Assembly: GCA_002269645.1 (NCBI GenBank)
Contig: NIVC01003621.1
Coordinates: 1-64,000 of the forward strand
Length of the DNA stretch: 64,000 nucleotides
Reading direction: 5' to 3'
Origin: Macrostomum lignano
Taxonomy: Eukaryota
Part shown: piece by piece, positions 7,785 to 36,364 of the stretch
How the letters are laid out: each line of letters starts with the position of its first letter
How positions within the stretch are numbered: the first letter of the stretch is position 1
Position numbers and translations under genes: made by a program
Notes under the pieces: generated by a model
What the model saw: the letters and a program-made list of their open reading frames with translations, nothing else
What the model was told of the DNA's origin: nothing
Database searches by the model: none

Positions 7785-8915
7785 GTGATTGACATTGCAT
7801 GTTCTTTAGTTTGATTGACCTTGATTGACATCTCAGGTGTTTTGTAGTTTGATTGACCTTGATTGACATCTCAGGTGTTTTGTAGTTTGATTGACCTTGA
7901 TTGACATCTCAGGTGTTTTGTAGTTTGATTGACTTGATCGACATCTCAGGTGTTTTGTAGTTTGATTGACTTGATCGACATCTCAGGTGTTTTGTAGTTT
8001 GATTGACTTGATCGACATCTCAGGTGTTTTGTAGTTTGATTGACTTGATCGACATCTCAGGTGTTTTGTAGTTTGATTGACCTTGATTAACATCTCAGGT
8101 GTTTTGTAGTTTGATTGACCTTGATTAACATCTCAGGTGTTTTGTAGTTTGATTGACTTGATCGACATCTCAGGTGTTTTGTAGTTTGATTGACTTGATC
8201 GACATCTCAGGTGTTTTGTAGTTTGATTGACCTTGATTGACATCTCAGGTGTTTTGTAGTTTGATTGACTTGATCGACATCTCAGGTGTTTTGTAGTTTG
8301 ATTGACTTGATCGACATCTCAGGTGTTTTGTAGTTTGATTGACTTGATCGACATCTCAGGTGTTTTGTAGTTTGATTGACCTTGATTGACATCTCGGGTG
8401 TTTTGTAGTTTGATTGACTTGATCGACATCTCAGGTGTTTTGTAGTTTGATTGACTTGATCGACATCTCAGGTGTTTTGTAGTTTGATTGACTTGATCGA
8501 CATCTCAGGTGTTTTGTAGTTTGATTGACTTGATCGACATCTCAGGTGTTTTGTAGTTTGATTGACCTTGATTGACATCTCAGTTGTTTTGTAGTTTGAT
8601 TGACTTAGATTGACATCTCAGGTGTTTTGTAGTTTGATTGACTTAGATTGACATCTCAGGTGTTTTGTAGTTTGATTGACTTGATCGACATCTCAGGTTT
8701 TTTGTAGTTTGATTGACTTGATCGACATCTCAGGTGTTTTGTAGTTTGATTGACTTGATCGACATCTCAGGTGTTTTGTAGTTTGATTGACTTGATCGAC
8801 ATCTCAGGTGTTTTGTAGTTTGATTGACTTAGATTGACATCTCATGTATTTTAGACTGATTGACCTTGATTGACATCTCAGGTGATTTATAGACTGATTT
8901 ATCTGAGATTGACTG
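7785..8915. repeat. 37-38 bp minisatellite (GACATCTCAGGTGTTTTGTAGTTTGATTGACTTGATC), upstream of the first clear SLC38A10-like exon
   Basis: About 30 near-identical tandem copies. Confidence 0.95.
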
Positions 8916-8992
8916 TTGACCTTTTTAAAAATTTGAGTTTAACGCGCACTTCACATACTACTGAGTTGCTTCATTAATATCCGTTTCCATAG

Positions 8993-11032
8993 CAACATCG
9001 GACTGGCGGTAGCGGCGGAGGCGGCGACCTCACCACAGGCCGGGTGTTCATTCCTGATGGGAAATTTCGCGGCATAACTTTGGCCATTGTGCTGGGCACG
9101 CTTGTTGGAGGTCTGCTAATTCCAAATGGTGTGTTTTTTGTTTTGTGCTGTGCACTGACAGTTCTTAAGGGTCTGCGGTAGTGCCAAATTTGGTCTAGGA
9201 GGGGTAGACAGTGTCTGGGAGGGGTAGACAGTGTCTGGGAGGGGTAGACAGTGTCTGGGAGGGGTAGACAGTGTCTGGGAGGGGTAGACAGGGTCTGGAA
9301 GGGGTTAGACAGGATCTGGGAGGAGTGGACAGGGTCTGGGAGGTGTCTTGGAAGGGTTAGATAGGGTCTGGGAGGAGTTAGATAGTGTCTAAGAGGGGTT
9401 AGATAGGGTCTGGGAGGAGTTAGATAGTGTCTAAGAGGGGTTAGATAGGGTCTGGGAGGAGTTAGATAGTGTCTAAGAGGGGTTAGATGGGGTCTGGGAG
9501 GGGTTAGGTAGGGTCTGGGAGGGGTTAGATAGTGTCTGCGAGGGGTAGACACGGTCTGGGAGGGGTAGACAGGATCTGGGTGGGGTAGACAGGGTCTGGG
9601 TGGGGTAGACAGGATCTGGGTGGGGTAGACAGGGTCTGGGTGGGGTAGACACGGTCTGGGAGGGGTAGACAGGATATGGGTGGGGTAGACAGGCTCTGGG
9701 TGGGGGTAGACAGGGTCTTGGTGGGGGTAGACAGGGTCTAGGTGGGGGTAGACAGGGTCTTGGTGGGGGTAGACAGGGTCTTGGTGGGGGTAGACAGGGT
9801 CTTGGTGGGGGTAGACAGGGTCTTGGTGGGGGTAGACAGGGTCTTGGTGGGGGTAGACAGGGTCTTGGTGGGGGTAGACAGGGTCTTGGTGGGGGTAGAC
9901 AGGGTCTGGGAGGGGTAGACGGTGTCTGTGACTCCTGGTTGGCCAGGACAAGCTCTGCAACTCTGATTGGTCAATCCTTGACCCGCCTACTCCAGTTGAG
10001 TTTATTTTAAGCCTGACTGGCTCAGTGACAGGCTCGGTGATCTGCTATATCCTGCCAGCCGGCATCTACTTAAACACATTCAGTGGAGTCAGGGCGCGCT
10101 GCTGCTCAATTGGCTGCGTGATTAAATGGCTGGGTGTGGCCACGCTGTGCATTGGCACAACGGCTACTCTGTTTGGACCTGGTGGAGGCGGCGAGAGCCA
10201 CGCGCCAGTTCAAAACCAGCCGCCCCCGCAGCTGCCCCATCGCGACAGCTATCCAGCTTCCATCGGATCGACTGTTGCCCGCCTGTCTCACCCCGACTAC
10301 ACTCCCGCTTCTCCGACTGTACTAATCAAGCAGGATCGTAAACTTAGCGGTAAATAAAACTTTTACACTGAAGCGGATTACACTACTTACACTATTCCAT
10401 TCAGTAGGCTAGTTAAGCATTTTATCAATATTTTCTATCGTTATTCGTTGTATCGCAATCCGGCAGACTCCGAAAGTCGTCAGGAGCCTCCGCTGCCTGT
10501 TTTGGCTCGGGAAGTTGTTGGAATCAAGGGACGAAATCCAATGAAGGAAAAACTGCAAAAGAAACTGCTATTCACTAAAACTACTACACTTGAACCAACA
10601 ACTCCTAGTGTGACTTTGAAAACGACAGAAATAGCACCGTCAAAATTGGCACCGACGCACAAATCTTCGACAGTAAAACCGACTACAAAATCGGCATTTA
10701 AGACGGCTACGAACTCGACAGGTTCCATTGAACAACAGACCAGAAAAAGTTCGAATAAGAGCGACCTGGAAGTGCTGGCAAGTCTGCTTCGCGAGCAGCG
10801 TGAGCAGGGTCGTCGAATCGAAGAGCAGCTCAAACGGTTGGAAGCCGCCAATGCTGTTGACCGACATCGGGAGCGTCGGAACTCCGACAAAACCGCCGCT
10901 GGCAACGATACTCAAGCAAGACGACTCGATGCTGTGGTTAATTACACGGCTACTACTAATAGTAGTACTACTAAAACAGTACTGAATGGAACTGCTACCA
11001 AAGTTGCTAAAACTAATCAAACCAAATTATAG
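8993..11032 (+). CDS. SLC38A10: SLC38A10-like amino-acid transporter, 3' exons only
   Basis: Exons 8993-9128, 9996-10349 and 10467-11032 have canonical AG/GT ends and consistent phase (352 codons). The translation FIPDGKFRGITLAIVLGTLVGGLLIPN|VEFILSLTGSVTGSVICYILPAGIY matches SLC38A10 ([43 protein letters not shown]). The tail carries RQEPPLP and a coiled-coil LLREQREQGRRIEEQL like the SLC38A10 C-terminus. Clean 5' exons were not found. Confidence 0.85.
9195..9920. repeat. ~21-bp G-rich minisatellite (GGGGTAGACAGGGTCTTGGTG) filling an SLC38A10 intron
   Basis: Tandem copies lie between exons 9128 and 9996. Confidence 0.93.
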
Positions 11033-11621
11033 AGGCTGTTGTTAATATACACTTTTTCCACTGGTGATTTTTGTTGCAATTTATTGTTTCCCAATTCGAT
11101 GTATTATGTGTGCTGCTATTTTGGCCTCTGGTATGCACGGATCTACTTTACTGGTAGAGCAATTTATATATTAACTCATTATTTCATTAAATGAATTACA
11201 AATATGAGCGCACATCGTGTAGTTGTTCATGGCTTTTGTGGTGCTTGTTAAACTGTGAACATTGAAAACTATTTGAACATTTATTTTTTTATAGTTAGTT
11301 ACTAACTGAGCTGGATTTCATTCCATTGTACTAACACATTTTGAGTTTAAAAAAGGGTGGATGATTGATCTTACTAAGTACTTTTAATGAAACTTTTAGG
11401 GTAACAAAAACAAACAAGATCAAGCTGTTTTGATGGCTAGCAGGTAAAAAATAGTCACACTGAAACCGCAAAATCAACTGTAGTAACAATTTGTAATCAT
11501 TTTTAGCGGAAAAAACATACGAATCAAAACACCTTAAGTACTATTTTTGACAGTAAATTCAACGCACAAAAACGCCTTTCCCGTTGAAATAATCTACTGG
11601 CTCGTAGCTCAGAGCCTATAG

Positions 11622-14470
11622 TTAAAAGTTTTTCTGAAACTGAGACTCGGTCTCTCGTTGGCTTTTCCATTTAATTGTCTGCTCGGGGCCCTCGGTTTGG
11701 CCCACCGACTCGCTGAAGTCTCCGCTGGCGATGCAGATTTTCACTATCACCTCGCGCTTGTTCACCTGTTCGCCGGTTTTCTCAGTTGTGATCAGCTTTC
11801 TTGTTACAATTCGCTTCTTGTTCACGAACTTCTTCGTGCTAGACGTTGTCTGGCTGGTGCTTGACTGGTTGGATGAATCCTGCCTTTGAACCTGCTGCTC
11901 AGCTTGCTGTTGCACCTGCAGCTGTTGCTGCATTTTCTGTTGCTTCTTTTGACGCCGCCGAGCGCTTTTGCTGGATGTTAAAGAGCCTGCAGCAGCGCTT
12001 GTAGTGCTCTCACTAGCGGTGGTCGCCGATATTGTCTCCTCCACCTCCGCCTCCGAGTCCTCCTCGTTAGCATTGTTAGCCTCCTGAACAGCTTGCTCAG
12101 AGGACATTTCAGCAGATGCTTCCACCGTTGACTCAACCGACTGCTCAACCGAAGATGCTTCTACCGTTGACTGCTCAACCGAAGATGCTTCTACCGTTGA
12201 CTGCTCAACCGAAGATGCTTCTACCGTTGACTGCTCAACCGACGATGCTTCTACCGTTGACTGCTCAACCGAAGATGCTTCTACCGTTGACTGCTCAACC
12301 GAAGATGCTTTTACCGTTGACTGCTCAACCGAAGATGCTTCTACCGTTGACTGCTCAACCGAAGATGCTTCTACCGTTGACTGCTCAACCGAAGATGCTT
12401 CTACCGTTGACTGCTCAACGGACGCTTCTTGCTTCTGATCGTCCGCCATTTGCTGCTCAAACGGAACACCTGTGTCGGGGCCAAGCGGCTCTACGTGAAC
12501 GGCTGTCACCTCCTCCTCGATTGGCTGTTGCTCTGCAGTGGCTGCCGCTCCCTCTATCAAACTGAAATTATGGTGTCATTTATTGCTGACGATGAATCAA
12601 TGCATGTTTGTAGCGTGATTACACTGTTTGGAGCGTGGGGAGAGGTTGACTTTAAGTCACTTTGCTCATGGGTCCAAGTGGCGTTTTTTCGCTTATTATA
12701 CATATCGCAAAAACTTGAAAATTTTTCAAAGAGTGACTAGCCACTTGGTATGGGTTGGCCCATTGACTTTATCGGATTGGATCTTGAGTTCTATCCCAGG
12801 AAAAATCAAGTAGTCGAAGCGAAATCAATAAAAATTCAAACCTTTTGTCAGCCTTTTCCTCCTCTCGTTTCTGATCGTCTAGCATTTGCTGTTCGAATGA
12901 GACGCCCGTGTCGGGACCTAACGGTCGCACGTAAGTGGCTGTCACCACTTCCTCAACGGGCAGTTCAACAGGAGTCTCCGAGGCTTCTGCTGTCTTTCCT
13001 TCCATTGAACTGTAGAAATTTTGCAATTGGTGAGATTCTTGTAAGCTAAGTGTGGTCCTGACTCCTTTTGTTTATGGTAGGTTTCACTGAATTTTTACTG
13101 CTGTTCCTATCGAACTCTATTGAAGGGCAGAATATGTACATCTGTGCATGTATATCACAGAAGAATAGTGCTTTACCTGGCGGTCACCTCTTCTCGTTTC
13201 TGATCTTCAAGCAGCTGTTGTTCGAAAGACACACCAGTGTCAGGACCTAGCGGCCGCACGTTGACTGCCGTCACCTCCTCCTCGACGTCTCCGAGCTGCT
13301 CCGGCAGTTCTGCTCCCGACTGTGCCAGCTTCTCCCAATCGGCCAGGTTAGCATCTTCCTCCATCATGGCCAGAAAAGTGGCTTCTTGACCGCTTGTCGG
13401 TTCTTCGGCAGTGCCTTTCGGATGTTCTTGCAGTTGCTTCTCCAGCGACACCTCGGTGCCGGGACCCTCTGGATCCGTGTGCTGCGCCACAATCGGAAGC
13501 TCTAGGCCAGCTGCTGGCTCGGCTTCGTCCATCAGCGACGCCCAGGCTGACACGGAATTCTCATCAATGGCGATGCTAAATCAGTAATAAAACATTTTAA
13601 GATTCAGCGGTTAATCTAGGCAACTTTCAATGCAATTTTTACGGTCTAACCTTGCTACGCCGGCTGTCTCAACGCCTTCCGCTCTGTCTGTCTTGGAGTC
13701 CAGCGTGCGCGATGATGCTACTGCCTGTTTCTCGGCTTGTGTGTGGCTTTGACTGAAATTGTCGGTACACTTTTTACCTCAATAGTAATGAAATTCAAGC
13801 ATACAAACCTTAGAGATTTAGTATATTTAGATTAACTGAGTAGCACGTTATCTGCGTGTACGCTTACGTAAATGAAGCCTCTTCAACCTCGAATTGCTGC
13901 GGCAAACTCTCTTGCTGCGACTCCCAGCTCCAATATTGCTGTTGCTGTTGTGCAAAATCGTTCTGTGGCACCAGCAGTTCCTGCTCCATGCGCTGCTGCT
14001 CCAGCAGTTCCTGCTCCTTGCGCTGCTGCTCCAGCAGTTCCTGCTCCTTGCGCTGCTGCTCCAGCAGTTCCTGCTCCATGCGCTGCTGCTCCAGCAGTTC
14101 CTCCTCCTTGCGCTGCTGCTCCAGCAGTTCCTCCTCCTTGCGCTGCTGCTCCAGCAGTTCCTGCTCATTGCGCTGCTGCTCCAGCAGTTCCTGCTCCATG
14201 CGCTGCTGCTCCAGCAGTTCCTGCTCCTTGCGCTGCTGCTCCAGCAGTTCCTGCTCCATGCGCTGTTGCTCCAGCAGTTCCTGCTCCATGCGCTGCTGCT
14301 CCAGCAGTTCCTGCTCCATGCGCTGTTGCTCCAGCAGTTCCTGCTCCTGCGTCTGATTTATTTCATGCTGCTGTGTCTGCTGCCACTCTTGCTGCCAGCT
14401 TTGCTGCACAACCTCTTGCTGCCAGCTTTGCTGCACAACCTCTTGCTGCCAGCTTTGCTGCGCACCCTCT

Positions 14471-14502
<32 letters not shown>

Positions 14503-16097
14503 TTGTTGTTGCTGCTGTGACTGCTGCCAGTTTTGCTGCACGATCTCTTGCTGCTGCTGTGACTGCTGCCAGTTTTGCTGCACGATCTCTTGCTGCTGCT
14601 GTGACTGCTCGAGCAGCAGCAGATGCCGCACGTACTGCACGGTAGTCTGGCTTTCGCTTGCGCTAGCCAGTTCCACCAAGCCGCGCCCATCTGCGCACCT
14701 GTGAAGTCGGTTGGCCGAAAATTCAATCAGCAGTCGGAGTAGATCTAAGTGGCCTTTCAGAGCGGCCAAAGTTGCGGCTGAATGGCCATTGTCCTGACAG
14801 ACGGCGTTCGGATCGGCTCCTGTGTGATGGTTTGCGTAGGATTTAAAAACGTAGAGCTAAATTCAACTATTAAAGAGAGTACGCCCGTATGTTTTCGCCA
14901 TCAAGCTCAGTAGCTCGTAGCTATCGTTAAAAACTCACCGGCTTCGAGTAGGAGCTGGGCCACCCTGTAGCTGGCATTCTCGATGCACAATATCAAAGCC
15001 GTCTTGCCGTCCCTATTGGTGGCCGCTTTGTTCGCGCCGTGACGCAGAAGCAGCTGCGCCACCTCGAGGCTGTCAACCATGCCGCAGATCATCAGGGCGG
15101 TGAACTGGCCATTGCCGGCGGCGTTCGGGTCGGCTCCGTTGTCTAGCAGCAGAGCGGCAACGGAGTAGGCGTTGTTCTTGGCAGTGATCATCAGCGGCGT
15201 GACGGTGTCTCGGCGTTGCATCGACACGTTGGCCCCTCGCGTCAGCAGGAGGCTGGCCATCTCGGCGTGGTCGTACTGGCAGCACCACATCAGGGCAGTT
15301 TGGCCGTGCTGCTCGTTGCCGACGTCCGGGTTTGCCCTGGCCTCAAGGAGCACCTGTAGATTGTTATTTAAACCTTATTGGATTTTTCTACGAGTGTAAG
15401 ATTCTTCGTATATTTTATAGCGATTATTTTTGCGTCCATTAATTCATACGGCCTTCGTCTCCTTTTTATTGGAGGCAGGGGTCTGTGTGCACTTGGGCGC
15501 ACTTAAAGCGACATTGTTACACAACCGGCAAGAGGCATTGCTGCCCATTCCACCGACTCATTCCGCGGATACGTACGCAGTCATGCGCACAGGCACACAC
15601 CCACGCAGGAGTGTACAGCGGCCCTTACTGTATTTATCGTTAGTCCTCAAGGCCATTAATTGCACGAGAAGAGCCAAGCCGAGATTCCAATTTAGCCCCA
15701 AGTTAATGCGACTGCGCTTGGAATCGAGCCTGGGCCGCTGGCACGTAAGAACGCCGCGCTATAGCACACAAGGCTACGGCTCCCGTCCCCCTCTTACCTG
15801 AGCCACTCCAATCGAGTTGTACTGCGCCGCAATCATCAGGGCCGTACAGCCGAGAGAATCTTCTCGCGCCTCAACTTGAGCGCCCTTCTCCAGCAGCAGC
15901 AGCGCCGCCTCCCAGCGATCCTTGAACGCCGTGGCTATCAACGGCGTCCTACGGAATTCGCTCTCGCGCTCGTTGACATCCGCGCCAGCCGCCAGCATCT
16001 GTCGAAGTTCTTCTAGCCGGCCGAAATAGGCCGCCCAATAGAGGACGTCGGATGTGCTCTCGCCTGGCGTCTGCTCTCTGCTGCCGCCAAGTCCCAT
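11622..16097 (-). CDS. Ankyrin-repeat protein (~1091 aa) with Q/E-rich region, a repeated PLGPDTGVSFEQQ module and an S/E-rich tail
   Basis: Exons 16097-15798, 15353-14939, 14819-13868, 13752-13651, 13575-13177, 13009-12842 and 12561-11622 are all GT-AG and phase-consistent (3276 nt). Several ankyrin motifs are present (RTPLIATA, CTALMIAA, QTALMWCC, VTPLMITA, FTALMICG, KTALILCI; LLxxGAxxN). Confidence 0.85.
12120..12425 (-). repeat. Coding 30-bp minisatellite (EASSVEQSTV)n in the last exon of the ankyrin gene
   Basis: About 10 in-frame tandem copies. Confidence 0.9.
13970..14345 (-). repeat. Coding 30-bp minisatellite (EQQRMEQELL)n in exon 3 of the ankyrin gene
   Basis: About 12 in-frame tandem copies, preceded in the protein by poly-Q and QQSWQQE repeats. 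Confidence 0.9.
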
Positions 16098-16866
16098 GAC
16101 GGATGCGCGCTGTTGGACTGCGATAGGCGCTGAAATGCGTGAACACTGCTCATTATGTTATGATTCTTCTTTTGGTTTTTGAAGACTTACCAACGATCTG
16201 TGCAAGGTTGTTAACCTTGAAATATTGAACTATAATTTTCCGCTCATAGCAGTGGCTTAAACTAACTTACGATTTGTTATGTGATAGACATCTTTATCCA
16301 AAGATTATGTTCATGCACATAAGCCACTTACATTAAGCTTCAATGTTGCCGGTAGTTCAAGCAGTTTCCTTCAAGCCTTAGAATTAAGCATTCGGAACTC
16401 AATGCTTCTCCGACGCAGTCTCTCCCTCCCTGCCCTGAGGCTTGTTTTAAATGCTATTTTTTCGCTTCTTTCTTTTGCAGCCGCCTTCTATGACTGAGCA
16501 ATACTTAATGCTCAGGCTCAGCGAACCAACCCCCCCCCCTCGGGCACGCACCAGACTCGTGTGCGCAATGCCATCGCAATGCGTGCCACAAGCAGCCTAA
16601 AAACTTAGTCAACGACGAGATTGACGATGCATTTTAAAGGCAGAGAGAGAGAGGGGGACGGCAGGGTATATACAATGTGAACATTTCAGCTAGGTAAAGA
16701 GGTTCGGTTTGAGCATGCATAAGAGAGCAGTTCAGCTCAAATCAAATGGTATAAGCAAGAGCTGACTGACTGCCAGCCTGCCGGGGGCAACCAGAGAATA
16801 AAACACAAGGAAACAATGCTGCGAAATTATTGCCAAAAGATTTAACCAGCAGAGGGGGTATATGCG

Positions 16867-16901
<35 letters not shown>

Positions 16902-17927
16902 ACAGGCAATACAAGCGGCTAGACTGGCAAAGTAAAATATGCATGAAAAAAGAGTCTCGTTTTTCTGACAACAAAACCACTTCCAGTGCGGCAAGTTTGT
17001 TTCTTAGTACGTTTTATTTAAGGTACGACGCGAATATTGAAATGAAAAATACGTTGCCTAAGCCACCTTACTCTTAAGGCTTTATCGTCCTATAGTACTA
17101 TGAGTAGACATGATTTTCCCTTAAAATTCTAGAAATCCTTTCAAAAAAATAAGAGTAAAATTGCCGGCATTTCAACAAAAATAACAGCTGCTTGTATCTG
17201 AAGCTCGCTGGAATTCGAGTATAATAAATACGACGAGGATGAATATTTACTTCGATGCTACTACTACCACGATAATAAGTAGCTACATTTGGAATTTAGG
17301 TGATTTCTAAAATCTTTAAATTAAATTACAACATGCATTAAGACAAAAATGAAATGTACATCAATCTCAATTGACTATAGCGTACTATTTCGCTTCCGTA
17401 ATAAAAATACGTAATCTTTACCAAAAGCGTGTAGCAATAAATATTAGCGCAAAAAATGTGTTCTCTAAAAATATGACAGAAGACGCACTTCACCGTCGCT
17501 TGCAGAAAATAAATAAACCACAGGTATAATAATAAATAACTTTAAAAAGCAGATAAAATTACAGCAGAAAATATGATTTTAATGTTTAATTCACACTGAA
17601 AAGTGTGAGCTCACAAAAATGGGGAGTGGTGATTTGGTTCACCGCAAAGAGTGAACTGGTTAATGAACCAGTATCTTAATCCAAAAAGACAGGGCTTGGC
17701 ATACCCCGTCAGCTTTTACTGGCGGAGGGGAATGCCCCCTGTCTCCCGCAAAAATCAAAATATACAAATATGCATCTGTAGGATTTGATAAAGATAAAGC
17801 GTGAAATTCTCGATGAGATACGGTTATTAGCGATTATTTACAAGTTACATGTAAGTCCGTCTCAGAGCTTTGAGTAACCGCGCAGAATCTGTGGTCATCC
17901 AATAACCAACAGTCGCTGGCTCTGAAC

Positions 17928-19755
17928 TCAATTTTTCCCGACGAAAAAGGGAATAAACCGCACAATCAAGTGGAGCGGAGCAGACTTCTTTAACTCGTAC
18001 TGTATCAGACTGTCGCAGTTCGCGCACTGCTTCTTGGCCCTCTCCTGGCACTGCTGATTCGAACTGCTGTCCAACGCCAGTTCCTCGTCCGAGTCGCAGC
18101 TGTATTGCCGGTCTGGAACGTCGCTGAACCGGCACAGGCAGCTGTCGCTCCAGTTCAGCAAACTTGGCAGCGGCGTCAGCTTGATATCAGTCGACAGCTG
18201 CTCAAAGTAGCTGCTCAGCCTGGCTACAGTCAGGTCGGTGATTCGTTCTCCCGACTCGGCGAAGTTTTCCAAGTAGGTCGATATGGCCGCTCTGTTCACC
18301 TGCTTGGACGAGATTGTCTCGCGAAGAATGTTCTCGCTCGGCATGAAGTAGTTCGGAATGAAGCCGTTGGCTGCGCATGTCATGAGCAGCTCGATGGTTG
18401 ATTCGACAAGCTGCAGCAGTGACAGCTGCTCGTGTTCCGATTGCAACAGAAGCCACAGGTAGCAGGTCTTGGCATGGTAGGACTTGAAACCCGCCGGCTT
18501 TAGGTAGCGATGGCAGACCTTCTTCAGCAGAGCGTAGCCGGCTCCGAGCTTTGGCGAGAGCTCTTCAATTAGTCGGCACTCGATTTCGTTGTATGAGTAG
18601 CGCCAGGTATGCGAGTACTGCTTGCTTCGGCCTTTGTACGCACCAATGGGAACTATGTGGATCGGAGCGCTTCCCACTCGCTTGCTGATGCCAAGAGGGC
18701 TGGTGGTCTGTCGGATGACCCACTCTTTCAGCAGCCACGGCCGGTTCCTGCAAACGTATTCATATTTTATGTTTGATGGCTGACAAGCGAGGTACCAAGA
18801 TTACCAAGAGGCTCCAATCCTCGTACATGTATATTTGAATATGGTCAAATCAAGAAATCACTCACTTCAGCGCTATGGTGCAGACAAAGTCAACCTCTCG
18901 GTGTTCCTCGCGTCCACCCACGATGAAGCAGTAGTCATGCGTCACGGCCGGCCCGTGCTCGTGAATTCGCGACCGGGTCCCGGGCTCGAGCTTGCCCTGC
19001 GACAACAGCGCGTTACTATTCGCCAATCGCCAATCGCTAAATTTCTTGCGAAACTTGCCCGGACTGAGTACTTTAGAAGTGGCGCTCGCGTCGGTGAAGC
19101 GACGTCCACGACGGAACAGTTCGGACTTGCCTTTCCGCCTGTAGATTTTGGCTACCATGGATGGCCGCGTCAGCTGACAGAAACCGGGCACAATATTTAT
19201 GACTTCCAGTCCAGCTGGACGCTTCTTAGTCAGCACCAAGTCGATGTCGGACGTGTCCTGGAAGCCCCAAACCTCGCGGACGCTGCCTTGAAAGCGATAG
19301 CCAGAGGGCAACTGGTTGGACCGCATTATCTCGCGACACTCTTCAATAGCCAGCATCTCGTGGTCAACTCGCTCCTCGATGAGTCTGCTGAGTCGATTCA
19401 GCTCGTTTGCACTCGTTCTGGACTGAACTGTGTAGATTGACTGTTTAGCCGCATCTTTCATTGCTTCAGCTCGCGTGAAGTGCACCACAAACAGCTCCCG
19501 TCCATTTGCCGGCATGCATTCCCAATTTTTCAGGCACTCCGGTTCTTTCGGGGATCTTTCGCCGCTTAATTTGTTAGTGGCATCGCTTTGCTGAGTTGGT
19601 TTGCTGCCGCTGGCTGCATTCTGCTTGCCTCTTTGCCTTTTTCCAGAGGGAGCTTTCTCGAGGCTCTTCTGCTGCTGCCAGACCTTTTGCAGGTGCTGAC
19701 GCTGTGGACTGGCCAGATCGGCCAAAAATCCCATTACGGGGCCGAACGCCTGCAT
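17928..19755 (-). CDS. cGAS-like receptor / Mab-21-domain nucleotidyltransferase (~569 aa)
   Basis: Exons are 19755-18866 and 18747-17928 (GTGAGT...TTTGCAG, phase 2). The NTase motif is FQGSVREVWGFQDTSDIDLV (hGS-x11-DhDh) with a third acidic residue in EVDFV. Mab-21 C-lobe motifs are HIVP, WRYSYNEIECRL, YALLKKV and KSYHAKTCYLWL. The start codon is uncertain. Confidence 0.85.
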
Positions 19756-20808
19756 TTCAGAAATCTCTTTAGCCGTCAATGGTGGGTAAGATCATGTCTC
19801 TCTCTATCTCTCTCTCGACTTTCTTAAGTTTGTTACTAAATTTATCGCGTTGAGGCGCTTTGTAGAAATCTATTGACCAATCACCGCTTTACAGCGCTGG
19901 TTTTTACTTTTCAAACGAAGCACACATCAGCACGATAAAGTTTGGTAATATCAATTCATTGGGCGCAGCACGAGCTAATACCAGGCACTCCAGGCCATAG
20001 GATGACTAATGGTGTACGAGCTATTTTTAGTAACAGGTATGGGCTACGGGGTACGAGTTTGCTGGAGTTGGCTCTGGTTCCACTGTCCACCTAGCGTACT
20101 ATTGACTCCACTGCTCTGCAAGAACGGACCGCTATGCACGCTGCGCTTTTACTTGGAAACTCCGAGTTAAAAATGAGACGGCTGAGGCACAGGCGCTAAA
20201 AATAGAATCAGACTTGAAGGAGCGAAAGTACTGCATAAACTAGTATAGGCTGAAAATGTAACTGTCCTATTTTGGTCTCTTTATAAGCTCTACATTATGT
20301 AGCTTAATGTTGACTTACTTGACCTAACTGCAGGGGTCCAGGCATCCTAATACAGCGGGGAGGCGTCGCAGCTGGTGCTGCGGTGTCGCGCAGGGAGATC
20401 CGGTGGTCCAGAAGGTGTTAGCTTTATGTTAGCCACAAGTAATAGAGCGCTGGATTCTCTAAGTAAATATTTATAGAATTCTATTTGAAGCACATCATCC
20501 AGTGTTTCTAAGTCTAGCATCTACTGTAGTTTAGGCAAGTAAACTTAGTATTACGCTGAAAAATTGCAAAAATGTTAATATAACAAACCGGGGGTATTGA
20601 TAGTATTATGGCCTACCTAAACCATGAAAACATAAGTAGGTACACGTAAAATGTGATTTGCGACATCCTGCACCGTAAGAACTACAAAATCTTTGAACTT
20701 GCCAAACCTAGCTATAGCATTCTAACTTTATCTTGTTGCTTATAAAATTGTTGTTCTCAAAAATCAGAACCAAAGTAGATCACTAAGTGTTAAAATAAAA
20801 TATAGTAT

Positions 20809-22114
20809 TGAGGCGGAAGGCCTTTTAGTTCGATAGATGGTATGGCAGCGAAGAGTTTTGTGCTGCATTGCGTGTATATTTATATGTACACAGACTGCGC
20901 GAGATTGAGGGGCCTAGGGAGGTGCGAAAAGGTGGCGTGGCGTGATAGGCTACGCCGACCCCCCCCCCCGGCTTAGCGAGCCGGCTAGCATGGCGCGCAC
21001 CCACCCCACCTGAGCTAGACAGAGGTTTGGGGGCGTTTCCAGTGCGGCTGCACTGGTGCTGCCAGTCGCGTACAGTCTGGCCGCCACACAGCTCCCCCCA
21101 GCACCGAGCTAGGCCCCGAACGTCGGGTGGTAGCCGAGGCCGCGAGAATGCCGAGGAGCGGGCGCCGAAGGCAGCAGGGGCGCGAGGCGGGCACTGAAGG
21201 CGGCAGGGGCGCGAGGCGGGCGCCGAAGGCGGCAGGGGCGCGAGGCGGGCGCCGAAGGCGGCAGAGGCGCCGATGGCAGCAGCAGGGCGCCAGGCGGGCG
21301 CCGAAGGCAGCAGCAGGGCGCCAGGCGGGCGCCGAAGGCAGCAGCAGGGCGCCAGGCGGGCGCCGAAGGCAGCAGCAGGGCGCCAGGCGGGCGCCGAAGG
21401 CAGCAGCAGGGCGCCAGGCGGGCGCCGAAGGCAGCAGCAGGGGTGCGCAGCCGGACCACACCAGAGGCAATCGACAGTCAGTTGCCGCCGTGAGCCGGGT
21501 CGATGCTCCTGCACAGAGGCTGGGGACGTTAGGCTAGCAACAGCGGTGCTAGCCTAGAATGAGCTGCAGCGTGTGGCGCTGGTTGGTCCAACGCGGGGGC
21601 CGAAAGGCGAGACCCCAGGAGCTACCGGGTGGCGGGCTGACTGGGCCGATTCGTGCTGCGGGCCGCGGGGTACTGCTGTAGCTGCTGGGCTGCTGGGCTG
21701 CGGTGCTGCAGGGCTGCTGCTGGGCTGCGGTGCTGCTGTGCTGCCGTTGCAGTCGGCCAAGGCGGTTGGCTGCCAGGACCGCACAGGGCCGACCAGGTAG
21801 GCCCAGCGTTCCGCGCTGGGAGTCGGGCTCACCAATGAGGCGGAAGGCCTTTTAGTTCGATAGATGGTATGGCAGCGAAGAGTTTTGTGCTGCATTGCGT
21901 GTATATTTATATGTACACAGACTGCGCGAGATTGAGGGGCCTAGGGAGGTGCGAAAAGGTGGCGTGGCGTGATAGGCTACGCCGACCCCCCCCCCGGCTT
22001 AGCGAGCCGGCTAGCATGGCGCGCACCCACCCCACCTGAGCTAGACAGAGGTTTGGGGGCGTTTCCAGTGCGGCTGCACTGGTGCTGCCAGTCGCGTACA
22101 GTCTGGCCGCCACA
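20809..22114 (-). mobile_element. Non-autonomous LTR retroelement (TRIM-like), 1306 bp
   Basis: Direct repeats 20809-21088 and 21836-22114 (~280 bp) have TG...CA ends and differ, as far as I can see, only in one poly-C length. A 4-bp target-site duplication GTAT flanks both sides. On the minus strand a PBS (TGGTGAGCCCGAC) follows the 5' LTR and a polypurine tract (GGGGGGAG) precedes the 3' LTR. No gag/pol similarity was recognised in the interior. Confidence 0.9.
21160..21440. repeat. GC-rich 28-31 bp tandem repeat inside the TRIM (CCGAAGGCAGCAGCAGGGCGCCAGGCGGGCG)
   Basis: Direct tandem copies. Confidence 0.85.
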
Positions 22115-23770
22115 GTATAGAAAATTATATTTTCGATATTTGAACTTCTTCATGCGTCATTCAGAATCACGGCAGTTTGAATAGGGAATTTAATGGTGCA
22201 GTGAAATTATATACAGTCCAACATTCTATCTGGAGGCGATAGAAAGATTTAATACCCCTAGGACTGGGACGTGTACAGGCGGCTTTAAAATTTCTGCGCT
22301 CCATCATGTAAGCTTTATACTAAAGTTGTTGGTGCCGCTGCAACCGACGCCGCCACCAACCCCTTTACCGGGGGCTTGGAAAATCATGCTAGCACTGAAA
22401 CGCGTCGTCTAAAAGAACAGAACGAATTTTTTGGGAGAGATTTGCAGCGGTAGAAAGTGAAGTAGACGGACAGAGAGGCACAGAAGCGGAGAGGAAGGGA
22501 GCGGCACACGCACTGACCTTTTGCGTCAATGGATGATTCGGCAAAACTCCTTCGGGCAGAATGTGTGCCTGCACAGCCCCTCATAGCACCGCTGGTGATT
22601 CGGTGTACAATGGTAAAGGTGTATAAATGGATTGATCGCAGCTGCGGCCCCCTCAACTCCCCTACGCATAGATTCGGTGCCCTTAGAGCCTGCAGCTCCA
22701 TCTGATCCTCTGAACCGCGTTCTTGCTGACTGGATCCATCTCTGGAGCTTTCGTCTGAGTTTTTCCGGTATAAACCACAGCATAAAGAAAGTTAACGATA
22801 CTCAATAGTTTAAGTGGAATCACCTTTTCCTTCCTTTCTAAGAAAGAATTGCAATCGTATTTTTATCGGAAAACAGCTGACGTGCCAATTAAAGTTCAGC
22901 CTCAATTAGTTTTCCCCAATTTCGTCTCGACACAAAGAGAACAAAAGAGAGCATTCGATAGGAAAGGACTGTCATGAGTCGTTCAAAAGTTGAAAAGTGA
23001 GTGCTGCATGCGTGAAAAAAAGTATTTTAAAGTTTCTTGGTTTTAAATCAGTTAATCTAGAAAAGTTTACTTAACTTTATAAGGCCTATCATTAAATTGC
23101 GTGTATTTGTACTTTTATATCCGCCACCAAGTTTCCGTTATAACTAGTGCGGAAGCTCATAATGAGATATGCAGGTGAAACCAATTGACAAAGCCAGGGC
23201 AGTGCACTATGCTGTACAGAGGAAGCCTACAGGGCAGCAAAAATCAATGCCGAACCTTCCCTACGCCTACCGCGACCCGCTCCAACTCGGCCGAAAGTGA
23301 AGGAAGTTAGGGGGGGGAGTGAGGGGAAGGAGGAGAATTGGGCAGTAAGACCGAGTACACTGGCTAATGGAATGGAACAGCTCGCAGGTAAGGCAGGCGG
23401 AACCGATGTAGCAGTGGTTCGGTTGTTGGAACATTTGAATTTTTCGCCTGGCCTTCTGCTGCACGGCTCGGTTGGCTCGCGCGGAAGGTTAGAAAGTATA
23501 GAACGAAAGAAATATGGGTTGGAATCCGATGGCTTCAGCTCCCCTAAGTCAGAGGGAAGGGTGAGGGGCCAGATGGCGTGGCTAGTTAACTGCGGACACG
23601 GTCTGGTGGCTAAAAACGAAGAACGTCCAGCGCAGGTTTTTTTAAGGCTAGCAGTTTCTTCGCAACCATTTTTTGTTTCGTCTCTTTTCTGCAGATCCTT
23701 TTCGTTTTTCTGATACTCTTTTTTAAAAATTAATTGTGCTCTACCCGACCGTAGAACTACTGAGATCACG

Positions 23771-26700
23771 ATGAGTTCCGGAGGCGGCAGTAGGAGCTCC
23801 AGGATGGAGTCCAGCACCACAACGCTGTCTCGACAGGTGTACAGGGGACTGTCGCCCAACAGCCAGTCGAGACTGGAGGTAATTCTTGGTGGTACATTTC
23901 CTAACTGTAAAACTCGCAATACTGGTTTTAATGCGTGGGTGACGAATAAACTGACGAATAGAGTAACTAATAGATTGACGAATAGAATAACTAGTAGAGT
24001 GACGGATAGAGTAACTAGTAGAGTGACGAATAGAACAACTAGTAGAGTGACGGATAGAGTAACTAGTAGAGTGACGAATCGAGTAACTAGTAGAGTGACG
24101 GATAGAGTAACTAGTAGAGTGACGAATCGAGTAACTAGTAGAGTGACGGATAGAGTAACTAGTAGAGTGACGAATAGAACAACTAGTAGAGTGACGGATA
24201 GAGTAACTAGTAGAGTGACGAATCGAGTAACTAGTAGAGTGACGAATCGAGTAACTAGTAGAGTGACGAATCGAGTAACTAGTAGAGTGACGAATCGAGT
24301 AACTAGTAGAGTGACGAATCGAGTAACTAGTAGAGTGACGAGTAGAGTAACTAGTAGAGTGACGAATATAGCAACTAGTAGAGTGACGAATATAGCAACT
24401 AGTAGAGTGACAAATAGAACTATTACAGTGACAAAGTCTGTGATCGTTAGGGTACCAACAAGAATAGTAGTGGAGCTAGTGGCGTGCAAAAAGAGTGACC
24501 AGTAGGTCAAAGTGTCAACACCCTTTAGACAAAAGGATTAACTTCTTATTCTGCAAAATTGAACGCCCAACACCGCCACCGCAGACGAGGATCAAGGAGC
24601 TGGAGGATTTGCTCCAATTTGAGCGCGACGCGAGGGTTCGGGTAAGAAACTTCAGAACCGTATTTGTTTTTTGAACCTGATCTGCGAGCAGCATTCAAAG
24701 CTCGTAATATGAATATTATTTTTTTCACCTTTCAGTCCGAGCGAGTGATCAACGAGTACAACTTCCAGCTGGAATCTGCTAACGAACGAATCGAAGAGGC
24801 CGACAACATCGCCTCTCAAGCTCAGGAGGCTGTGCGACGTCGCGAGCTTGATCTGCAAAAAGTTCGCAAAGAACTCGAAGCCGCGAACGCCCAGTTGGAG
24901 TCTCTCGAGGTCAGCATCAAGAAGAAGTACACCGTCAATATTGCCGAGCTCAATGACGAGGTTGACAGTCTGAGAAAATTGAAGACTCGTCTTGAGAAGG
25001 AGAAGACGGCGTTGCTGGGCGAGCTAGACAACCTGGGCGGACAGCTGGACCAGGCTATCAAGGCCAAGGTGAGACTGGATGGACAGGATCGAGGGACGAG
25101 TGGACAGGATGGAGTGACGGTTGGACAGGATGGAGTGACGAGTGGACAGGATGGAGTGACGAGTGGACAGGATGGAGTGACGAGTGGACAGGATGGAGTG
25201 ACGAGTGGACAGGATGGAGTGACGAGTGGATAGGATGGAGTGACGAGTGGACAGGATGGAGTGACGGGTGGACAGGATGGAGTGACGGGAGGACAGGATG
25301 GACAAGATTGGCAGACAAATGGGCATGACAAAGACTTGAATAGACAAGATGGAATATATATGCCAAGATAAGGTTCAGATTAGATGCACGGATGGACGTT
25401 AATGCACATTGGTCAATGACTCATTCAGACAGCCTAATTACCTTCACCCCCAACCCAGAACACCGTGGAATCCAAGCTGGAAGGCTACGATGCTCAACTG
25501 TCTCGGCTTCGTGCTCAAAACGACGAGCTGGCTGGGCAGCTTCGCTCAATGCAAGAGTCCCAGAGCCGGCTGCAGGCCGAGAACAGCCAACTGCAGCGAG
25601 CTGCTCACGACGCCGAGTCGCAGGTGTCCGGACTGTCCAAGGCCAGGTCGTCGCTGCAGGCCCAGCTCGAAGAGATGAAGAAGACGCTGGATGAGGAATC
25701 TCGAGTGAGTTTACCTGGGTTCGATTTCCACACGAATTTGACCATCCCTAGGTACATCTCATCCCTATACTGCTTGACATGACTCCTATCTGGCTGCGGG
25801 TCGACTGACTTGTTTTCTATACTCTATACTTTCTACTTATTAGTAGACGAACTCCGACATTATTCACCGCAAGGTTAAGCTATTTGTCTTCGGTTAGTCT
25901 GCCGCTAAAAACGCTGCTTGCGTCAATTATTCTTTAAGCTTAAGGCATCCTGAGCGAGTAGCTTATTTATAGTGATTTTATTAAAATTCTAGAGACAAAA
26001 TGAAGAACTACTTAGCTCATAGTAAGAATCTCTTCGGCTTGTTACGATTACCACTTTAGTAGTAAACGGAGCCCTACTAAAATTCGATTTCCAGTCGCGA
26101 AGCAACCTGCAAACGCAGTTTATGACGCTGCAGCAGGAGTATTACAATCTGCAGTCCAAATACGACGAAGAAAGTGAAGAGGCCGCTTCGTTGAGGGTGC
26201 AAATCAACAAACTCAACTCCGAGTTGACCACCCTACGTTCAAAGTACGAGAGGGACTTTGTTAGCCGAGTGGAAGAGTTCGAGGAAGTCAAGTGAGTTTG
26301 TTTTCAACTTGTCCAGCTTCCAGTTGTCCTAGACTAGTAGCCCTTCAACTTGACTTTGACTTGAGTGCTACGAAATTTCCCTGCACCTCGCAGACGCAAG
26401 CTGACAGTGAAAGTCACCGAGCTGGAAGACGTCGCCGAGCGCGAGCGCAGCCGGGCGAACAACATGGACAGGTCGCGTCAGCAGCTGCTAGCCGAGCTCA
26501 AGGCCTTGCAGGGAGACACGGACGCGCTACAGGTTAGCTTACGTGGATTATTGAAATCGTTGATGCTCTAAACTGTCACTAAAATTTGTCGATTCTCCAA
26601 AAAACACGCAGGCCGCCAACGCTGAGCTGGCCTCCCAGGTGAAACAGTCGGAGGCCACGGTGAGCCAGTTGACGGTGCGAATCGAGGAGCTCACCTCCGA

Positions 26701-29700
26701 GAGCGCTTCGCTGCAAGCCACTCTGCAGTCTCAACAAGCCGAGCTGGCCAAGCTGCGCAAATCGTTGAAATCGGCAGACGACCGCATCGCCCAGCTGGAG
26801 CGGGACAATGCCCAGCTGGCCGGCAGCCTCAAGGAGGCCAACTCGGCCAATCGCGACCTGACCAGACGCCTGGCCGACTCCGACGCGGCCAGAGCCGAGG
26901 CCGAAGCGGCACGAGACTCGTTCGCCAGCTCTCTGCGCGACGCCGAGGAGGCTGTGCGCGAGCTGACGCAGAAGCAGGCGGCCACCGCCGATGCCCTCGC
27001 CCGCCTGCGCTCGGATCTGGAAACTCGCCTGGCCGAGAAGGAGTCCGAGCTGGAGAGTCTCCGGCGGAGCAGCCAGCGCACTGTTGAGGAGCTGCAGGCG
27101 GCGTTGAACGACTCGGATGCGAAGCACAAATCGGAGGTTAACAGGCTGAGGAAGCACCTGGAATCTACCGTGCTGGACTTGGAGTCCCAGATTGACGTGG
27201 CCAATCGTGCCAACCAGGTTGGTAACTAGCAACAAAATCTTATACGATCAAGCACCTATGATTTCTTCAACACATTGAGTTGATGGGGTTTTAGTCTTGT
27301 GGATAGAGCGTCGGACTCACGACTGAAAGCTTGGAAATTCGATTTTCGACCCACTTAGAACAATTTAAGTCCTTGAGCAAGACACTTAATGCCAGCATTA
27401 GCTGAGGTAATTGAAAGTGGGTGTGGAGACCCACCAGTCCTTGGACTGAACAGCCGTATGCAGCCTTTAGATGCGCCACGCAATAGCTGCGGCTGAGCTG
27501 TCGGTTGAACATTAAAGCAGACGTAATCAATTATTATCATTATTACTTATGTGTTACTTCTTGTTCTGATTTTATTGAAATCTATTATTTTACAAGATAG
27601 CCTAAAAAGGCCAGACACTCTGCTTAGGGAACTCGTGGTTTGGTACATCACGAGGAGCCTCTCGTGTGTTTGATTTGTTAGTTGCGGCGAGGGGATGTTA
27701 AGTTCTACAGGAACTGTGCTGGACGCGTGGTTACCAAGAAACTACTGTGCACTTTACCATTCTCAACACAATCGCAGAACCTGGCCAAGGAGAACAAGAC
27801 CCTGCTGACGCGCATTCAGGAGCTGGAGGCTCTGCTAGAGGATGAGCGACGAGCCAACGAGGTGTCCCAGGGCGCGCTCTCGGCCAGCGAGAAGCGTCGC
27901 TCGGCGCTCCAGTCGGAGCTCAATGAGCTTCGCACAATCTGCGAGACAGCCGAGCGCGGCCGGAAGAAGGCCGAATCCGAACTGCAGGACGTCAGCGTTC
28001 GCATCAGCGAGCTGACCATGCAGCTGCAGACGTCTGGCAACGAGAGGCGCCGGCTGGAAGGCGAGCTGGCCTCGCTCAGGTCCGAGCTGGAGGACGCTCA
28101 GAGCGGCCGGGCTGCCGAACTGGACCGGGCCAACCGGCTCGCTGGAGAGGTGCAACGCCTGGCCGACGAGTTGCGGGCCGAGCAGGAGAACTACCGGGTG
28201 GCCGAGGGGCTGCGGCGCCAGCTGGAGGTGCGCGGAAAATCGTTTGCTTCGAGAAGAAACACAGCTTCTAGAAAAATAGACTGCTTTCAGAAGCAACTCC
28301 GATAAGATTGGCAAAGGATACTCTTCTGATGGAATCCTTTCTATGAATCCCCCTTAGAAGAACCCTCACGGAGTTGCTCACGAAGGGAGCTCTCTTCATT
28401 CTTTTACTCGTAAAAAGCAATGTGTTTCTTTTGGAAGCAGTGATCTGGTTCTTCTAGAAATCAAGTATTGCTTCTTCTGGAAGGGGAAAGGATTTTTTTT
28501 CAAAGGCCGAGTATACTATAGCAGAGTCATCAGGTTCCAATCCGATCCCGCATAAAGCATTTTCATACGCATATCCAACTGGCATCCGTGTATTCGTTTT
28601 TAATGACATATTCTAAAACCGGAAGCAAGCCGGAAGCCAAAAATGGACGAGTGGGTAAAAGGCGGATGTTCGATTTCGTCTAACGACGTTTCTGGAATAT
28701 AATTCAGAAAAACTTCAGAATCCAAGAGTCAATGCGTCATACTCACGAAAACTAACCCCCCTTCCCCTACCAAAAAGATTGAAATTCGAGAAGTGACGGT
28801 CAAACTCGAAGAGTCGGAGTCGCTAGCCTCGCGCGAGAGCAAACGCATCGCCCAGCGACTGCAGGAGCGAGTCCGGGAGCTCGAGGCTGAGCTCGAAGCT
28901 GAACAGCGACGGGCTCGCGAGTTCCAGGCGATCGTTAAGAAAATGGAACGCCAGGTTAAGGAGGCCCTCGCCCAAGCTGAGGAGGAGCGGCTGGTTAACA
29001 TCGAGTTGCACGACCTATTGGGCAAGGCGCAGCTTAAGATCAAGGCTTACAAACGGCAGGTGGAAGAGTCGGTAAGTGCGGGTTGGGCGACTGATTAGCT
29101 CCAGAAAAGAGGGGTATCTGTAGAACTAAAGAAAATAAACAGCATTCGTGCCAGAAAAGCGCCTGTACGACGTAAAAAGCAAGAATAGCGTGTCAATGTC
29201 AGGAATGTTAGCATCAGACGCGGAAGCGTCAGTAAAAACTAACATTAAGCGTCGAAATGAAACGTCAGGAAAGCGCAAAATTGTGTCAGAGGCAGGAAAG
29301 TGCCAACATAAGGTGCCAGGAGTTCCGTGTCAGAGGCAGGAAAGTGCCAACATAAGTGTCAGGAGTTCCGTGTCAGAGGCAGGAAACTGACAACAGGAAG
29401 CGTTGCTTTCAGTTGTCAGGCAGTTCAAGCATGTTCTAGTAAAAGAATATTCAATAGCAAAACCATCCCAACTCGCTGGAATATCCACCTGGAACTCCCA
29501 GGAGGAGGCCTCGGCTGCGGCCATCAGCAAGTACCGCAAAGCGCAGCAGGTGGCCGAAGAGGCCGAGCACCGAGCCGAAGTGGCCGAGCGCACAATGTCG
29601 GTGCGCAGCGGCGGCAGCGGCGGAACCGTCATCAGGTCGATCAGCGTTACCCGCGAGATGAACAGCAGCAGCTCGTCCGGGCACAAGCTGAGCAGCCGGG

Positions 29701-36226: not shown

Positions 36227-36364
36227 TATTAATCATTTACACAGCATTTTTAGTCGAAATATTTACTGCATGGCTTTAAAACTGCATAGCTTTAATATGA
36301 TCATTATTCGTATTAGAATGCTAGGAACATTCACTTTCAATGCAATACCTGAAAGTCACAAGCT

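What the first reader, a model, noticed from the sequence alone, without database searches (positions are those of the whole stretch)
17928..19755. Putatively active cGAS-like receptor (cGLR) in an apparent flatworm genome
Seen: a Mab-21-fold protein with the full catalytic set (GS-x2-E, DID, later D in EVDFV) and a basic N-terminal segment (KAPSGKRQRGKQ). It is too divergent to be the conserved developmental MAB21L protein. Known: cGLRs with these residues make cyclic dinucleotides in response to nucleic acids. My recollection is that cGAS/STING-type genes have been reported as scarce or absent in flatworms, which needs verifying. Inference: this may be part of an undescribed second-messenger immune pathway, with a receptor that may not be STING. 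No STING gene is in this window.
Basis: partly seen in the sequence, partly recalled or inferred. Interest (0 to 1): 0.75.

Follow-up and report, generated by a model that had tools for sequence, protein, structure and literature searches.

The report
Divergent flatworm cGAS-like receptor gene
A two-exon gene of the free-living flatworm Macrostomum lignano encodes a very divergent cGAS-like (Mab-21) enzyme that keeps its catalytic residues; it is real, but already annotated and belongs to a receptor family catalogued in this species in 2023.

Summary
On the minus strand, 19755-17928, two exons split by a 118-nt GT-AG intron encode 569 aa. The product is 100% identical to GenBank PAA50491.1 (BOX15_Mlig007181g3, "hypothetical protein", Macrostomum lignano). 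It passes Pfam Mab-21 and Mab-21_C. Its AlphaFold model matches cGAS structures (Foldseek E 3e-13). A family profile built without it aligns FQ-G157-S158, D170-I-D172 and V-D289-F to the invariant family columns, which correspond to cGAS G212/S213, E225/D227 and D319. It is not MAB21L-like, has no Zn thumb, and its core is basic (pI 9.6-9.9). It is a long orphan branch: in 1.84 billion representative proteins the best foreign match is E 1e-13, among bivalve and MB21D2-like cGLRs.

Flatworms are reported to lack cGAS/STING (Schistosoma, Schmidtea, "most platyhelminthes"). However, Li et al. 2023 already catalogued M. lignano cGLRs and cloned five of them. None of the 15 active enzymes they describe comes from a flatworm. 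This gene is a different, more divergent paralogue.

Activity, ligand and receptor are untested. I could not determine whether M. lignano has STING. Verdict: a new, or possibly already listed, member of a known kind, of modest interest.

The parts
17928..19755 (-). Whole gene, start codon to stop codon: a cGLR-like / Mab-21 domain protein of 569 aa, equal to BOX15_Mlig007181g3 (PAA50491.1).
18866..19755 (-). Exon 1 (codons 1-296 plus 2 nt). It encodes the disordered basic N-terminus, the spine helix, the GS loop, the DID motif and the third catalytic Asp.
   Evidence: splice model; identity to the GenBank protein.
18748..18865 (-). Intron of 118 nt, GT...AG.
   Evidence: It is identical in the g1 copy.
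17928..18747 (-). Exon 2. It encodes the end of the NTase core, the Mab-21_C helix bundle, an acidic Cys-containing C-terminal extension and the stop codon.
19621..19659 (-). Basic segment EKAPSGKRQRGKQ (res 33-45), inside an N-terminal region (res 1-110, pI 9.7) that is predicted to be largely disordered.
19273..19293 (-). FQGSVRE (res 155-161): the h[QT]GS activation-loop motif, with G157 and S158.
   Evidence: HMM alignment and register test. The spacing to D170 is the same as from S213 to E225 in human cGAS. The model has pLDDT below 50 here.
19237..19248 (-). DIDL (res 170-173): the first two metal-binding acids, D170 and D172.
   Evidence: These columns are D/E in 81/81 and 80/81 sequences. 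They align to cGAS E225 and D227.
18883..18897 (-). EVDFV (res 287-291): the third catalytic acid, D289, within a beta strand (res 282-295).
18946..18957 (-). HGPA (res 267-270): a conserved family motif upstream of the third acid.
19048..19161 (-). Very basic patch SMVAKIYRRKGKSELFRRGRRF...GKFR (res 199-236; res 199-232 have pI 11.7) between the DID strand and the third acid. It is a candidate ligand-contact surface (inference only).
   Evidence: pLDDT is low at res 208-226. The spacer length of 114 aa is normal for the family, whose median is 108.
18285..18500 (-). Mab-21_C (HhH/H2TH-like helix bundle), res 380-451.
   Evidence: pLDDT is about 90.

Best explanation
This is an intact, transcribed Macrostomum lignano gene for a highly divergent, lineage-restricted member of the animal cGAS-like receptor (cGLR) branch of the Mab-21/CD-NTase superfamily.

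Shown: the gene structure, the fold, the retention of the Gly-Ser loop and the three metal-binding acids, a basic catalytic core, and the absence of a cGAS Zn thumb.

Inferred: like other cGLRs, it sits inactive in the cytosol until a ligand binds the basic face opposite the active site. Binding would reorder the GS activation loop. D170, D172 and D289, with two Mg2+/Mn2+ ions, would then join two NTPs into a cyclic dinucleotide second messenger. The ligand is most likely a nucleic acid, and dsRNA is more likely than dsDNA, because the core pI is 9.6-9.9 and there is no Zn thumb. The receptor is unknown. STING is the default expectation if M. lignano has one.

My confidence that it belongs to the cGLR/Mab-21 family is about 0.95. 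My confidence that it is a working, ligand-activated nucleotide-messenger synthase is about 0.5. The confidence field gives the figure for the whole statement.
For: The gene model is identical to a GenBank protein derived from an RNA-seq-based annotation. Pfam Mab-21 and Mab-21_C both pass their cut-offs. The best solved-structure sequence match is human MB21D2 (E 1.4e-8), followed by cGAS and a cGLR1. The AF2 model has pLDDT about 83-92 over most of res 231-440 (one 10-residue block at 71-78) and matches cGAS over about 360 columns (E 2.7e-13, TM about 0.6 normalised to the target). A family HMM built without the query scores it at 160 bits and aligns GS157-158, D170, D172, HGPA and D289 to the conserved columns. 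hhalign maps those columns to cGAS G212/S213, E225/D227 and D319 at 99.6% probability (reference sequences verified). pI values come, and Li et al. report pI above 8.5 for nucleic-acid-sensing cGLRs. The cGAS Zn-thumb insert is absent. The ORF is intact in two genomic copies, with no amino-acid change between res 116 and 538.
Against: There is no biochemical evidence. The GS loop is modelled at pLDDT below 50, and MAFFT prefers a register with G152-Y153, which has no Ser. I could not inspect coordinates, so the geometry of the triad is unverified. The closest solved relative, MB21D2, has a full triad but no known ligand or product. Only 15 active enzymes came out of the 140 cGLRs that Li et al. 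screened, and those 15 are described as coming from insects, anemones, molluscs, hydras and corals, not flatworms. The two gene copies differ at only 12 nt (6 synonymous including the stop, 6 non-synonymous), so selection cannot be measured. Some structural family motifs are degenerate: WP..EW is RPWLLKEW here, and the second WP is missing.
Confidence: 0.55

Rival explanations
1. It is a Mab-21-fold protein that has kept the motif but works without making a messenger. It might act as a scaffold or as a nucleotide or ligand binder, as is suspected for MAB21L1/2 and not excluded for MB21D2.
For: MB21D2 is the best solved-structure sequence match, and it has no known activity despite a complete triad. 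Most screened cGLRs were inactive in vitro. The branch is extremely long and some structural motifs are degenerate. The Ser of the GS motif depends on the alignment register.
Against: All three acids, a Gly-Ser with cGAS-like spacing and the HGPA motif are retained despite about 80% sequence divergence. That retention is hard to explain without catalytic constraint. MAB21L1-type substitutions (NR, Q) are absent.
Confidence: 0.3
2. It is an active nucleotidyltransferase with a different chemistry. It might make linear 2'-5' oligonucleotides as OAS does, or a cyclic tri- or oligonucleotide or other non-CDN product, so the downstream logic would not be cGAS-STING-like.
For: The fold and triad are shared by OAS and bacterial CD-NTases, whose products vary (established knowledge). 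Nucleotide-selecting residues cannot be read from a family this divergent. Li et al. found unexpected products such as cUMP-AMP.
Against: The sequence and fold matches are to the Mab-21/cGAS branch. No bacterial CD-NTase model in PADLOC matches. All animal cGLRs characterised so far make cyclic dinucleotides.
Confidence: 0.12
3. It is a decaying or non-functional duplicate in a highly redundant, recently polyploid genome.
For: The assembly has extensive duplicated blocks at 95% identity or more. A third UniProt model (P0002, 509 aa) lacks the HGP...VDF segment. No orthologue is seen in any other species.
Against: A 569-codon ORF with a clean GT-AG intron is intact in both sequenced copies. The gene model derives from assembled transcripts. 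All six amino-acid differences lie outside the catalytic core.
Confidence: 0.05

Closest known systems
Human MB21D2 (C3orf59; PDB 7LT1), an orphan cGLR
   Same: It is the best solved-structure sequence match (E 1.4e-8, 37 bits over res 238-444). Both proteins have a G[GS]VRE activation-loop sequence (SGGVREG versus QGSVREV). Both have a complete triad, no Zn thumb and a long C-terminal extension. The query's best foreign hit, P0005, is itself strongly MB21D2-like (178 bits).
   Different: Identity is only about 25% in the C-terminal half. The query ranks about 98th of 157 sequences for MB21D2. Distances are saturated and no sister relationship has bootstrap support. MB21D2 is extremely conserved in vertebrates, whereas this gene has no detectable orthologue outside M. 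lignano.
Bivalve / lophotrochozoan cGLR radiations (Li et al. 2023, PMC9980059)
   Same: The named top hits are bivalve Mab-21 / 'cGAS' proteins from Sinanodonta and Ruditapes. The GSxxEG...SDxD, HGPA, xDxV and WR.S motifs are shared, and the spacer lengths are similar.
   Different: Identity is at most 28-34% over about 170 residues, with E-values of 1e-13 at best. The N-terminal half is not found by pairwise search.
The five M. lignano cGLRs cloned by Li et al. (#89-93: PAA86972.1, PAA45980.1, PAA57558.1, PAA93208.1, PAA68676.1)
   Same: Same species and same superfamily. They also carry a GS[FY]x[ED]xWG-type loop followed by SD[IV]D.
   Different: Scores against the query are only 6-15 bits, so it is a separate and much more divergent lineage. 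It was not among the cloned set.
Vertebrate cGAS
   Same: The fold matches (Foldseek E about 1e-13). The spacing from GS to the first acid is identical, and the triad is equivalent. The N-terminus is basic and disordered.
   Different: It scores 15.8 bits. It has no H(X5)CC(X6)C Zn thumb. It is not an orthologue.
MAB21L1/2 (developmental Mab-21)
   Same: The superfamily fold is the same (hhalign 99.3%).
   Different: It scores 2 bits by phmmer. MAB21L1 has N-R instead of G-S and Q instead of the third Asp.

Membership tests
cGLR (animal cGAS-like receptor, Mab-21/CD-NTase) | Mab-21 NTase core plus C-terminal helix bundle | tested here: met
   PF03281 scores 32.2 bits and PF20266 28.1 bits, both above the 24.1-bit cut-off. 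The family HMM scores 160 bits.
cGLR (animal cGAS-like receptor, Mab-21/CD-NTase) | Bilobed, caged cGAS-like tertiary fold | tested here: met
   The AF2 model has pTM 0.60 and core pLDDT about 83-92 over most of res 231-440. Foldseek finds cGAS chains at E 2.7e-13, TM about 0.6 and about 360 columns. Confidence is moderate because the N-lobe has pLDDT of only 50-65.
cGLR (animal cGAS-like receptor, Mab-21/CD-NTase) | h[QT]GS activation-loop motif | tested here: met
   F155-Q-G157-S158, followed by an 11-residue spacer as in human cGAS. The alternative MAFFT register (G152-Y153) is disfavoured by 6-9 bits.
cGLR (animal cGAS-like receptor, Mab-21/CD-NTase) | [DE]h[DE]h ... h[DE]h catalytic triad | tested here: met
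   D170, D172 and D289 lie in near-invariant columns that map to cGAS E225, D227 and D319. Their 3-D clustering was not checked because no coordinates were available.
cGLR (animal cGAS-like receptor, Mab-21/CD-NTase) | Ligand-dependent synthesis of a nucleotide second messenger | not testable with these tools
   This needs recombinant protein and a TLC or LC-MS assay.
Nucleic-acid-sensing cGLR subclass | High pI (above 8.5) and a long basic ligand groove | tested here: inconclusive
   Core pI is 9.6-9.9 and a basic patch at res 199-232 has pI 11.7, against the criterion quoted. Surface electrostatics were not mapped.
cGAS orthologue (dsDNA sensor) | Zn-thumb H(X5)CC(X6)C insertion and close sequence kinship | tested here: not met
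   There is no insert opposite cGAS 'HGKSKTCCENKEEKCC', and the score is only 15.8 bits.
MAB21L1/2 developmental proteins | High conservation with MAB21L and a degenerate active site | tested here: not met
   It scores 2 bits and gives no PDB hit at E of 10 or less. The query keeps GS and the third Asp where MAB21L1 has NR and Q.
MB21D2 orthologue | Reciprocal closest relationship and tree support | tested here: inconclusive
   It is the best PDB match and the best foreign hit is MB21D2-like. However, the query ranks about 98th for MB21D2, and the NJ tree is unresolved with 21% bootstrap support at most.
cGLR-STING pathway | A STING (PF15009) receptor in the same genome | tested here: inconclusive
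   There is none in the window. Word-index searches with human and hemichordate STING returned deuterostomes only, and those searches cannot reach a divergent flatworm protein.

The most novel reading that the evidence does not exclude
M. lignano, like the other flatworms examined, has no STING, yet it keeps several catalytically competent cGLR lineages, including this orphan one. If so, its product would signal through a receptor of a kind not yet described in animals.
Probability: 0.1. Interest if true: 0.8.

Novelty: new member of a known kind. Interest (0 to 1): 0.3.

Why it matters
Parasitic flatworms and planarians are reported to have lost cGAS, STING and much other nucleic-acid sensing. 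M. lignano is an early-branching, transgenic-tractable flatworm that retains cGLRs, and also Mx genes. That makes it the natural place to ask what the ancestral flatworm pathway was and what replaced it. This gene adds a second, very divergent cGLR lineage to the five already cloned from the species. It becomes important only if it proves active, or if the species proves to lack STING. As it stands, it is a candidate for the next biochemical screen, not a discovery.

Tried and rejected
1. MAFFT alignments (A1, A2 and local L-INS-i) put the family GS on G152-Y153. I traced this to two relatives with 'LPSGS'. I rejected that register in favour of G157-S158 after the HMM tests, but I keep it as a caveat. 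The AF2 run used the mis-registered alignment, which probably explains the low confidence in res 157-166.

2. I considered that the 114-aa spacer before D289 might be an unusual insertion that would fail the X50-90 motif of Li et al. I rejected this. The family median is 108 aa and 70 of 79 members exceed 90.

3. An NJ tree with bootstrap was tried. Distances are saturated (above 2 substitutions per site) and no placement is supported. Rank correlations of hit scores gave no specific affinity either.

4. dN/dS between the g1 and g3 copies was tried. With only 12 differences, and flanks equally similar, it is uninformative.

5. I tried to settle STING in M. lignano with two word-index searches and literature searches. 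This was inconclusive.

6. I tried to check whether PAA50491.1 or PAA54080.1 is in Li et al. Table S1. The stored file is truncated, and neither accession appears in the held text.

7. PADLOC (bacterial CD-NTase models) gave no match.

8. No paper mentions Mlig007181.

Full report
**Observation.** The minus strand between 19755 and 17928 carries two long ORFs in different frames (305 and 249 aa). They join through a canonical intron, AA|GTGAGT...TTTGCAG|G, at 18865-18748 (118 nt), giving a 1710-nt CDS of 569 codons. The product is 100% identical to GenBank PAA50491.1 (BOX15_Mlig007181g3). It differs at six residues from PAA54080.1 (g1). Both are 'hypothetical protein' of Macrostomum lignano, and UniProt names them 'Mab-21 domain-containing protein'. 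So the window is flatworm DNA and my gene model equals the public one. The GenBank annotation of this assembly was derived from a genome-guided RNA-seq transcriptome (PMC5730564). This is indirect evidence that the gene is transcribed.

**Family and fold.** Pfam Mab-21 (res 226-358, 32.2 bits) and Mab-21_C (res 380-451, 28.1 bits) both pass the 24.1-bit gathering score. Among solved structures the best sequence match is human MB21D2 (7LT1, E 1.4e-8). Porcine cGAS and a cGLR1 follow, and MAB21L1 is not found at all. An AlphaFold2 model built from a 77-sequence alignment has pTM 0.60. Per-block pLDDT is about 83-92 over most of res 231-440, with two weaker blocks of 71-78. Confidence is low in res 1-100, 157-166, 208-226 and after 480. 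Foldseek against the PDB returns cGAS chains first (E 2.7e-13, about 360 aligned columns, TM about 0.6 per target). No bacterial CD-NTase model in PADLOC matches.

**Catalytic motif.**
- An exhaustive HMMER search of 1.84 billion representatives found 262 relatives at E of 1e-3 or better. Only one passed 1e-30, and it is the species' own paralogue model.
- I built a profile from 80 of these relatives without the query. It scores the query at 160 bits and aligns FQ-G157-S158-VR-E161, S169-D170-I-D172, H267-G-P-A and V-D289-F to the family's 'tGSsaEG', 'SDiDim', 'hGPA' and 'evDfV'.
- Those columns are D/E in 80-81 of 81 sequences.
- hhalign maps them to human cGAS G212/S213, E225/D227 and D319 at 99.6% probability.
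- The S158-to-D170 spacing (11 residues) equals that of cGAS. The D172-to-D289 spacer (114 aa) is typical for the family, whose median is 108.
- MAB21L1 has N-R, E-x-E and Q at these positions, so the query does not show the 'inactive Mab-21' pattern.

**Caveat on the Ser.** MAFFT repeatedly puts the family GS on G152-Y153, because two relatives share 'QLPSGS' with the query's 'QLPSGY'. Destroying GS157-158 costs the profile score 6 bits. Destroying G152 costs nothing, and deleting GYRFQ raises the score. I therefore favour G157-S158, but not decisively. The AF2 run used the other register, which probably explains the unconfident loop. I could not inspect coordinates, so the spatial clustering of the triad is unverified.

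**Other features.**
- The catalytic core is basic (pI 9.6-9.9), with a very basic patch at res 199-232 (pI 11.7) and a basic, disordered N-terminus. The C-terminal 104 residues are acidic.
- Li et al. report pI above 8.5 for dsDNA- and dsRNA-sensing cGLRs.
- The cGAS Zn thumb is absent. In the Li et al. screen, dsDNA sensors sit close to cGAS in the tree, whereas dsRNA sensors are scattered. So if the ligand is a nucleic acid, dsRNA is the better guess. This is an inference.

**Relationships.**
- Named top hits are bivalve proteins.
- The best foreign hit, P0005, is a double Mab-21 protein from an unidentified ENA assembly. It is itself strongly MB21D2-like at 178 bits.
- The query scores 37 bits against MB21D2, 15.8 against cGAS, 6-15 against the five M. 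lignano cGLRs of Li et al., and 2 against MAB21L1.
- Distances are saturated and an NJ bootstrap gives no supported sister (21% at most).
- It is best described as an orphan long branch within the MB21D2-like / lophotrochozoan cGLR radiation.
- No orthologue at 50-90% identity exists in the 5.8-billion-cluster collection.

**Copies.** The g1 locus (L001) is collinear with the window. It differs at 12 of 1828 nt in the gene: 6 non-synonymous, all outside res 116-538, and 6 synonymous including the stop codon. The flanks differ by 0.3-1.3%. The copies are too similar to test for selection.

**What is known.**
- Wu et al. 2014 reported loss of both cGAS and STING in the flatworm Schistosoma mansoni.
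- A 2026 study found neither in Schmidtea.
- Li et al. [quoted passage not shown] Their Table S3 nevertheless lists five M. lignano cGLRs cloned for the screen, and further M. lignano accessions appear in their domain table.
- Their 15 active enzymes are described as coming from insects, anemones, molluscs, hydras and corals, not flatworms.
- Our accession is not in the held, truncated supplement text.
- M. lignano also retains at least six Mx proteins, consistent with a richer ancestral immune repertoire than other flatworms have.

**STING.** No STING gene lies in the window. Searches with human and hemichordate STING returned only deuterostomes, and the method cannot reach a divergent flatworm sequence. 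No paper addresses the question. The 'non-STING receptor' idea therefore remains untested. Wu et al. noted that fully sequenced species have either both genes or neither, which argues mildly that a cGLR-rich flatworm keeps STING.

**Verdict.** The gene is a real, intact and probably expressed cGLR-family member with a complete active-site motif. It is divergent enough to be interesting to cGLR specialists as a screening candidate. However, it is already annotated and belongs to a family already catalogued in this species. Novelty: new member of a known kind. Interest 0.3.

Noticed in passing
window 1-5224, 7800-8899, 31160-32753, 33228-36229, 36983-39623, 47929-48685, 50987-51967, 53741-54742 and others: About a quarter of the 64-kb window is minisatellite or microsatellite arrays, for example a 23-bp unit repeated 232 times at 1-5224 and a 25-bp unit repeated 120 times at 33228-36229. 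These arrays generate most of the long spurious 'ORFs' and the strong local GC-skew swings.
   Followed up: partly
window 26639-28305 (+): These look like exons of a myosin-tail / paramyosin-like coiled-coil protein. Pfam Myosin_tail_1 gives E 1.4e-8, below the gathering score for the fragment.
   Followed up: partly
window 41814-43904 (+): These look like exons of a major-facilitator-superfamily transporter. MFS_1 scores 55.7 bits on the second exon.
   Followed up: partly
L001 (NIVC01002973.1) versus window about 8000-24000: The g1 copy of the gene lies in a block collinear with the window, with about 99% substitution identity plus indels. This fits the known redundancy and recent polyploidy of the M. 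lignano assembly. In L001 the next genes are a 1060-aa protein with no Pfam hit and an Aa_trans transporter.
   Followed up: partly
P0002 (UniRef A0A1I8F3Z9, 509 aa): A third M. lignano model of this gene family lacks the HGPAVT...EVDFV segment, which is replaced by 'GPGREFT..STGRP'. That looks like a frameshifted model or a damaged copy. No DNA was available to check.
   Followed up: no
L002 3001-6420 (ENA ERZ21939214 ctg8767l): The query's best foreign hit, P0005, is a single-exon 1139-aa protein with two tandem Mab-21 plus Mab-21_C modules, next to a reverse-transcriptase fragment. The organism is unidentified. It scores 178 bits against human MB21D2.
   Followed up: partly
window 13864-14769 (-): This ORF has an ankyrin-like start (MAALKGHLDLLRLLIEF...) followed by a long Q-rich 'ELLEQQR' repeat encoded by a 30-bp minisatellite. 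It has no Pfam hit.
   Followed up: no
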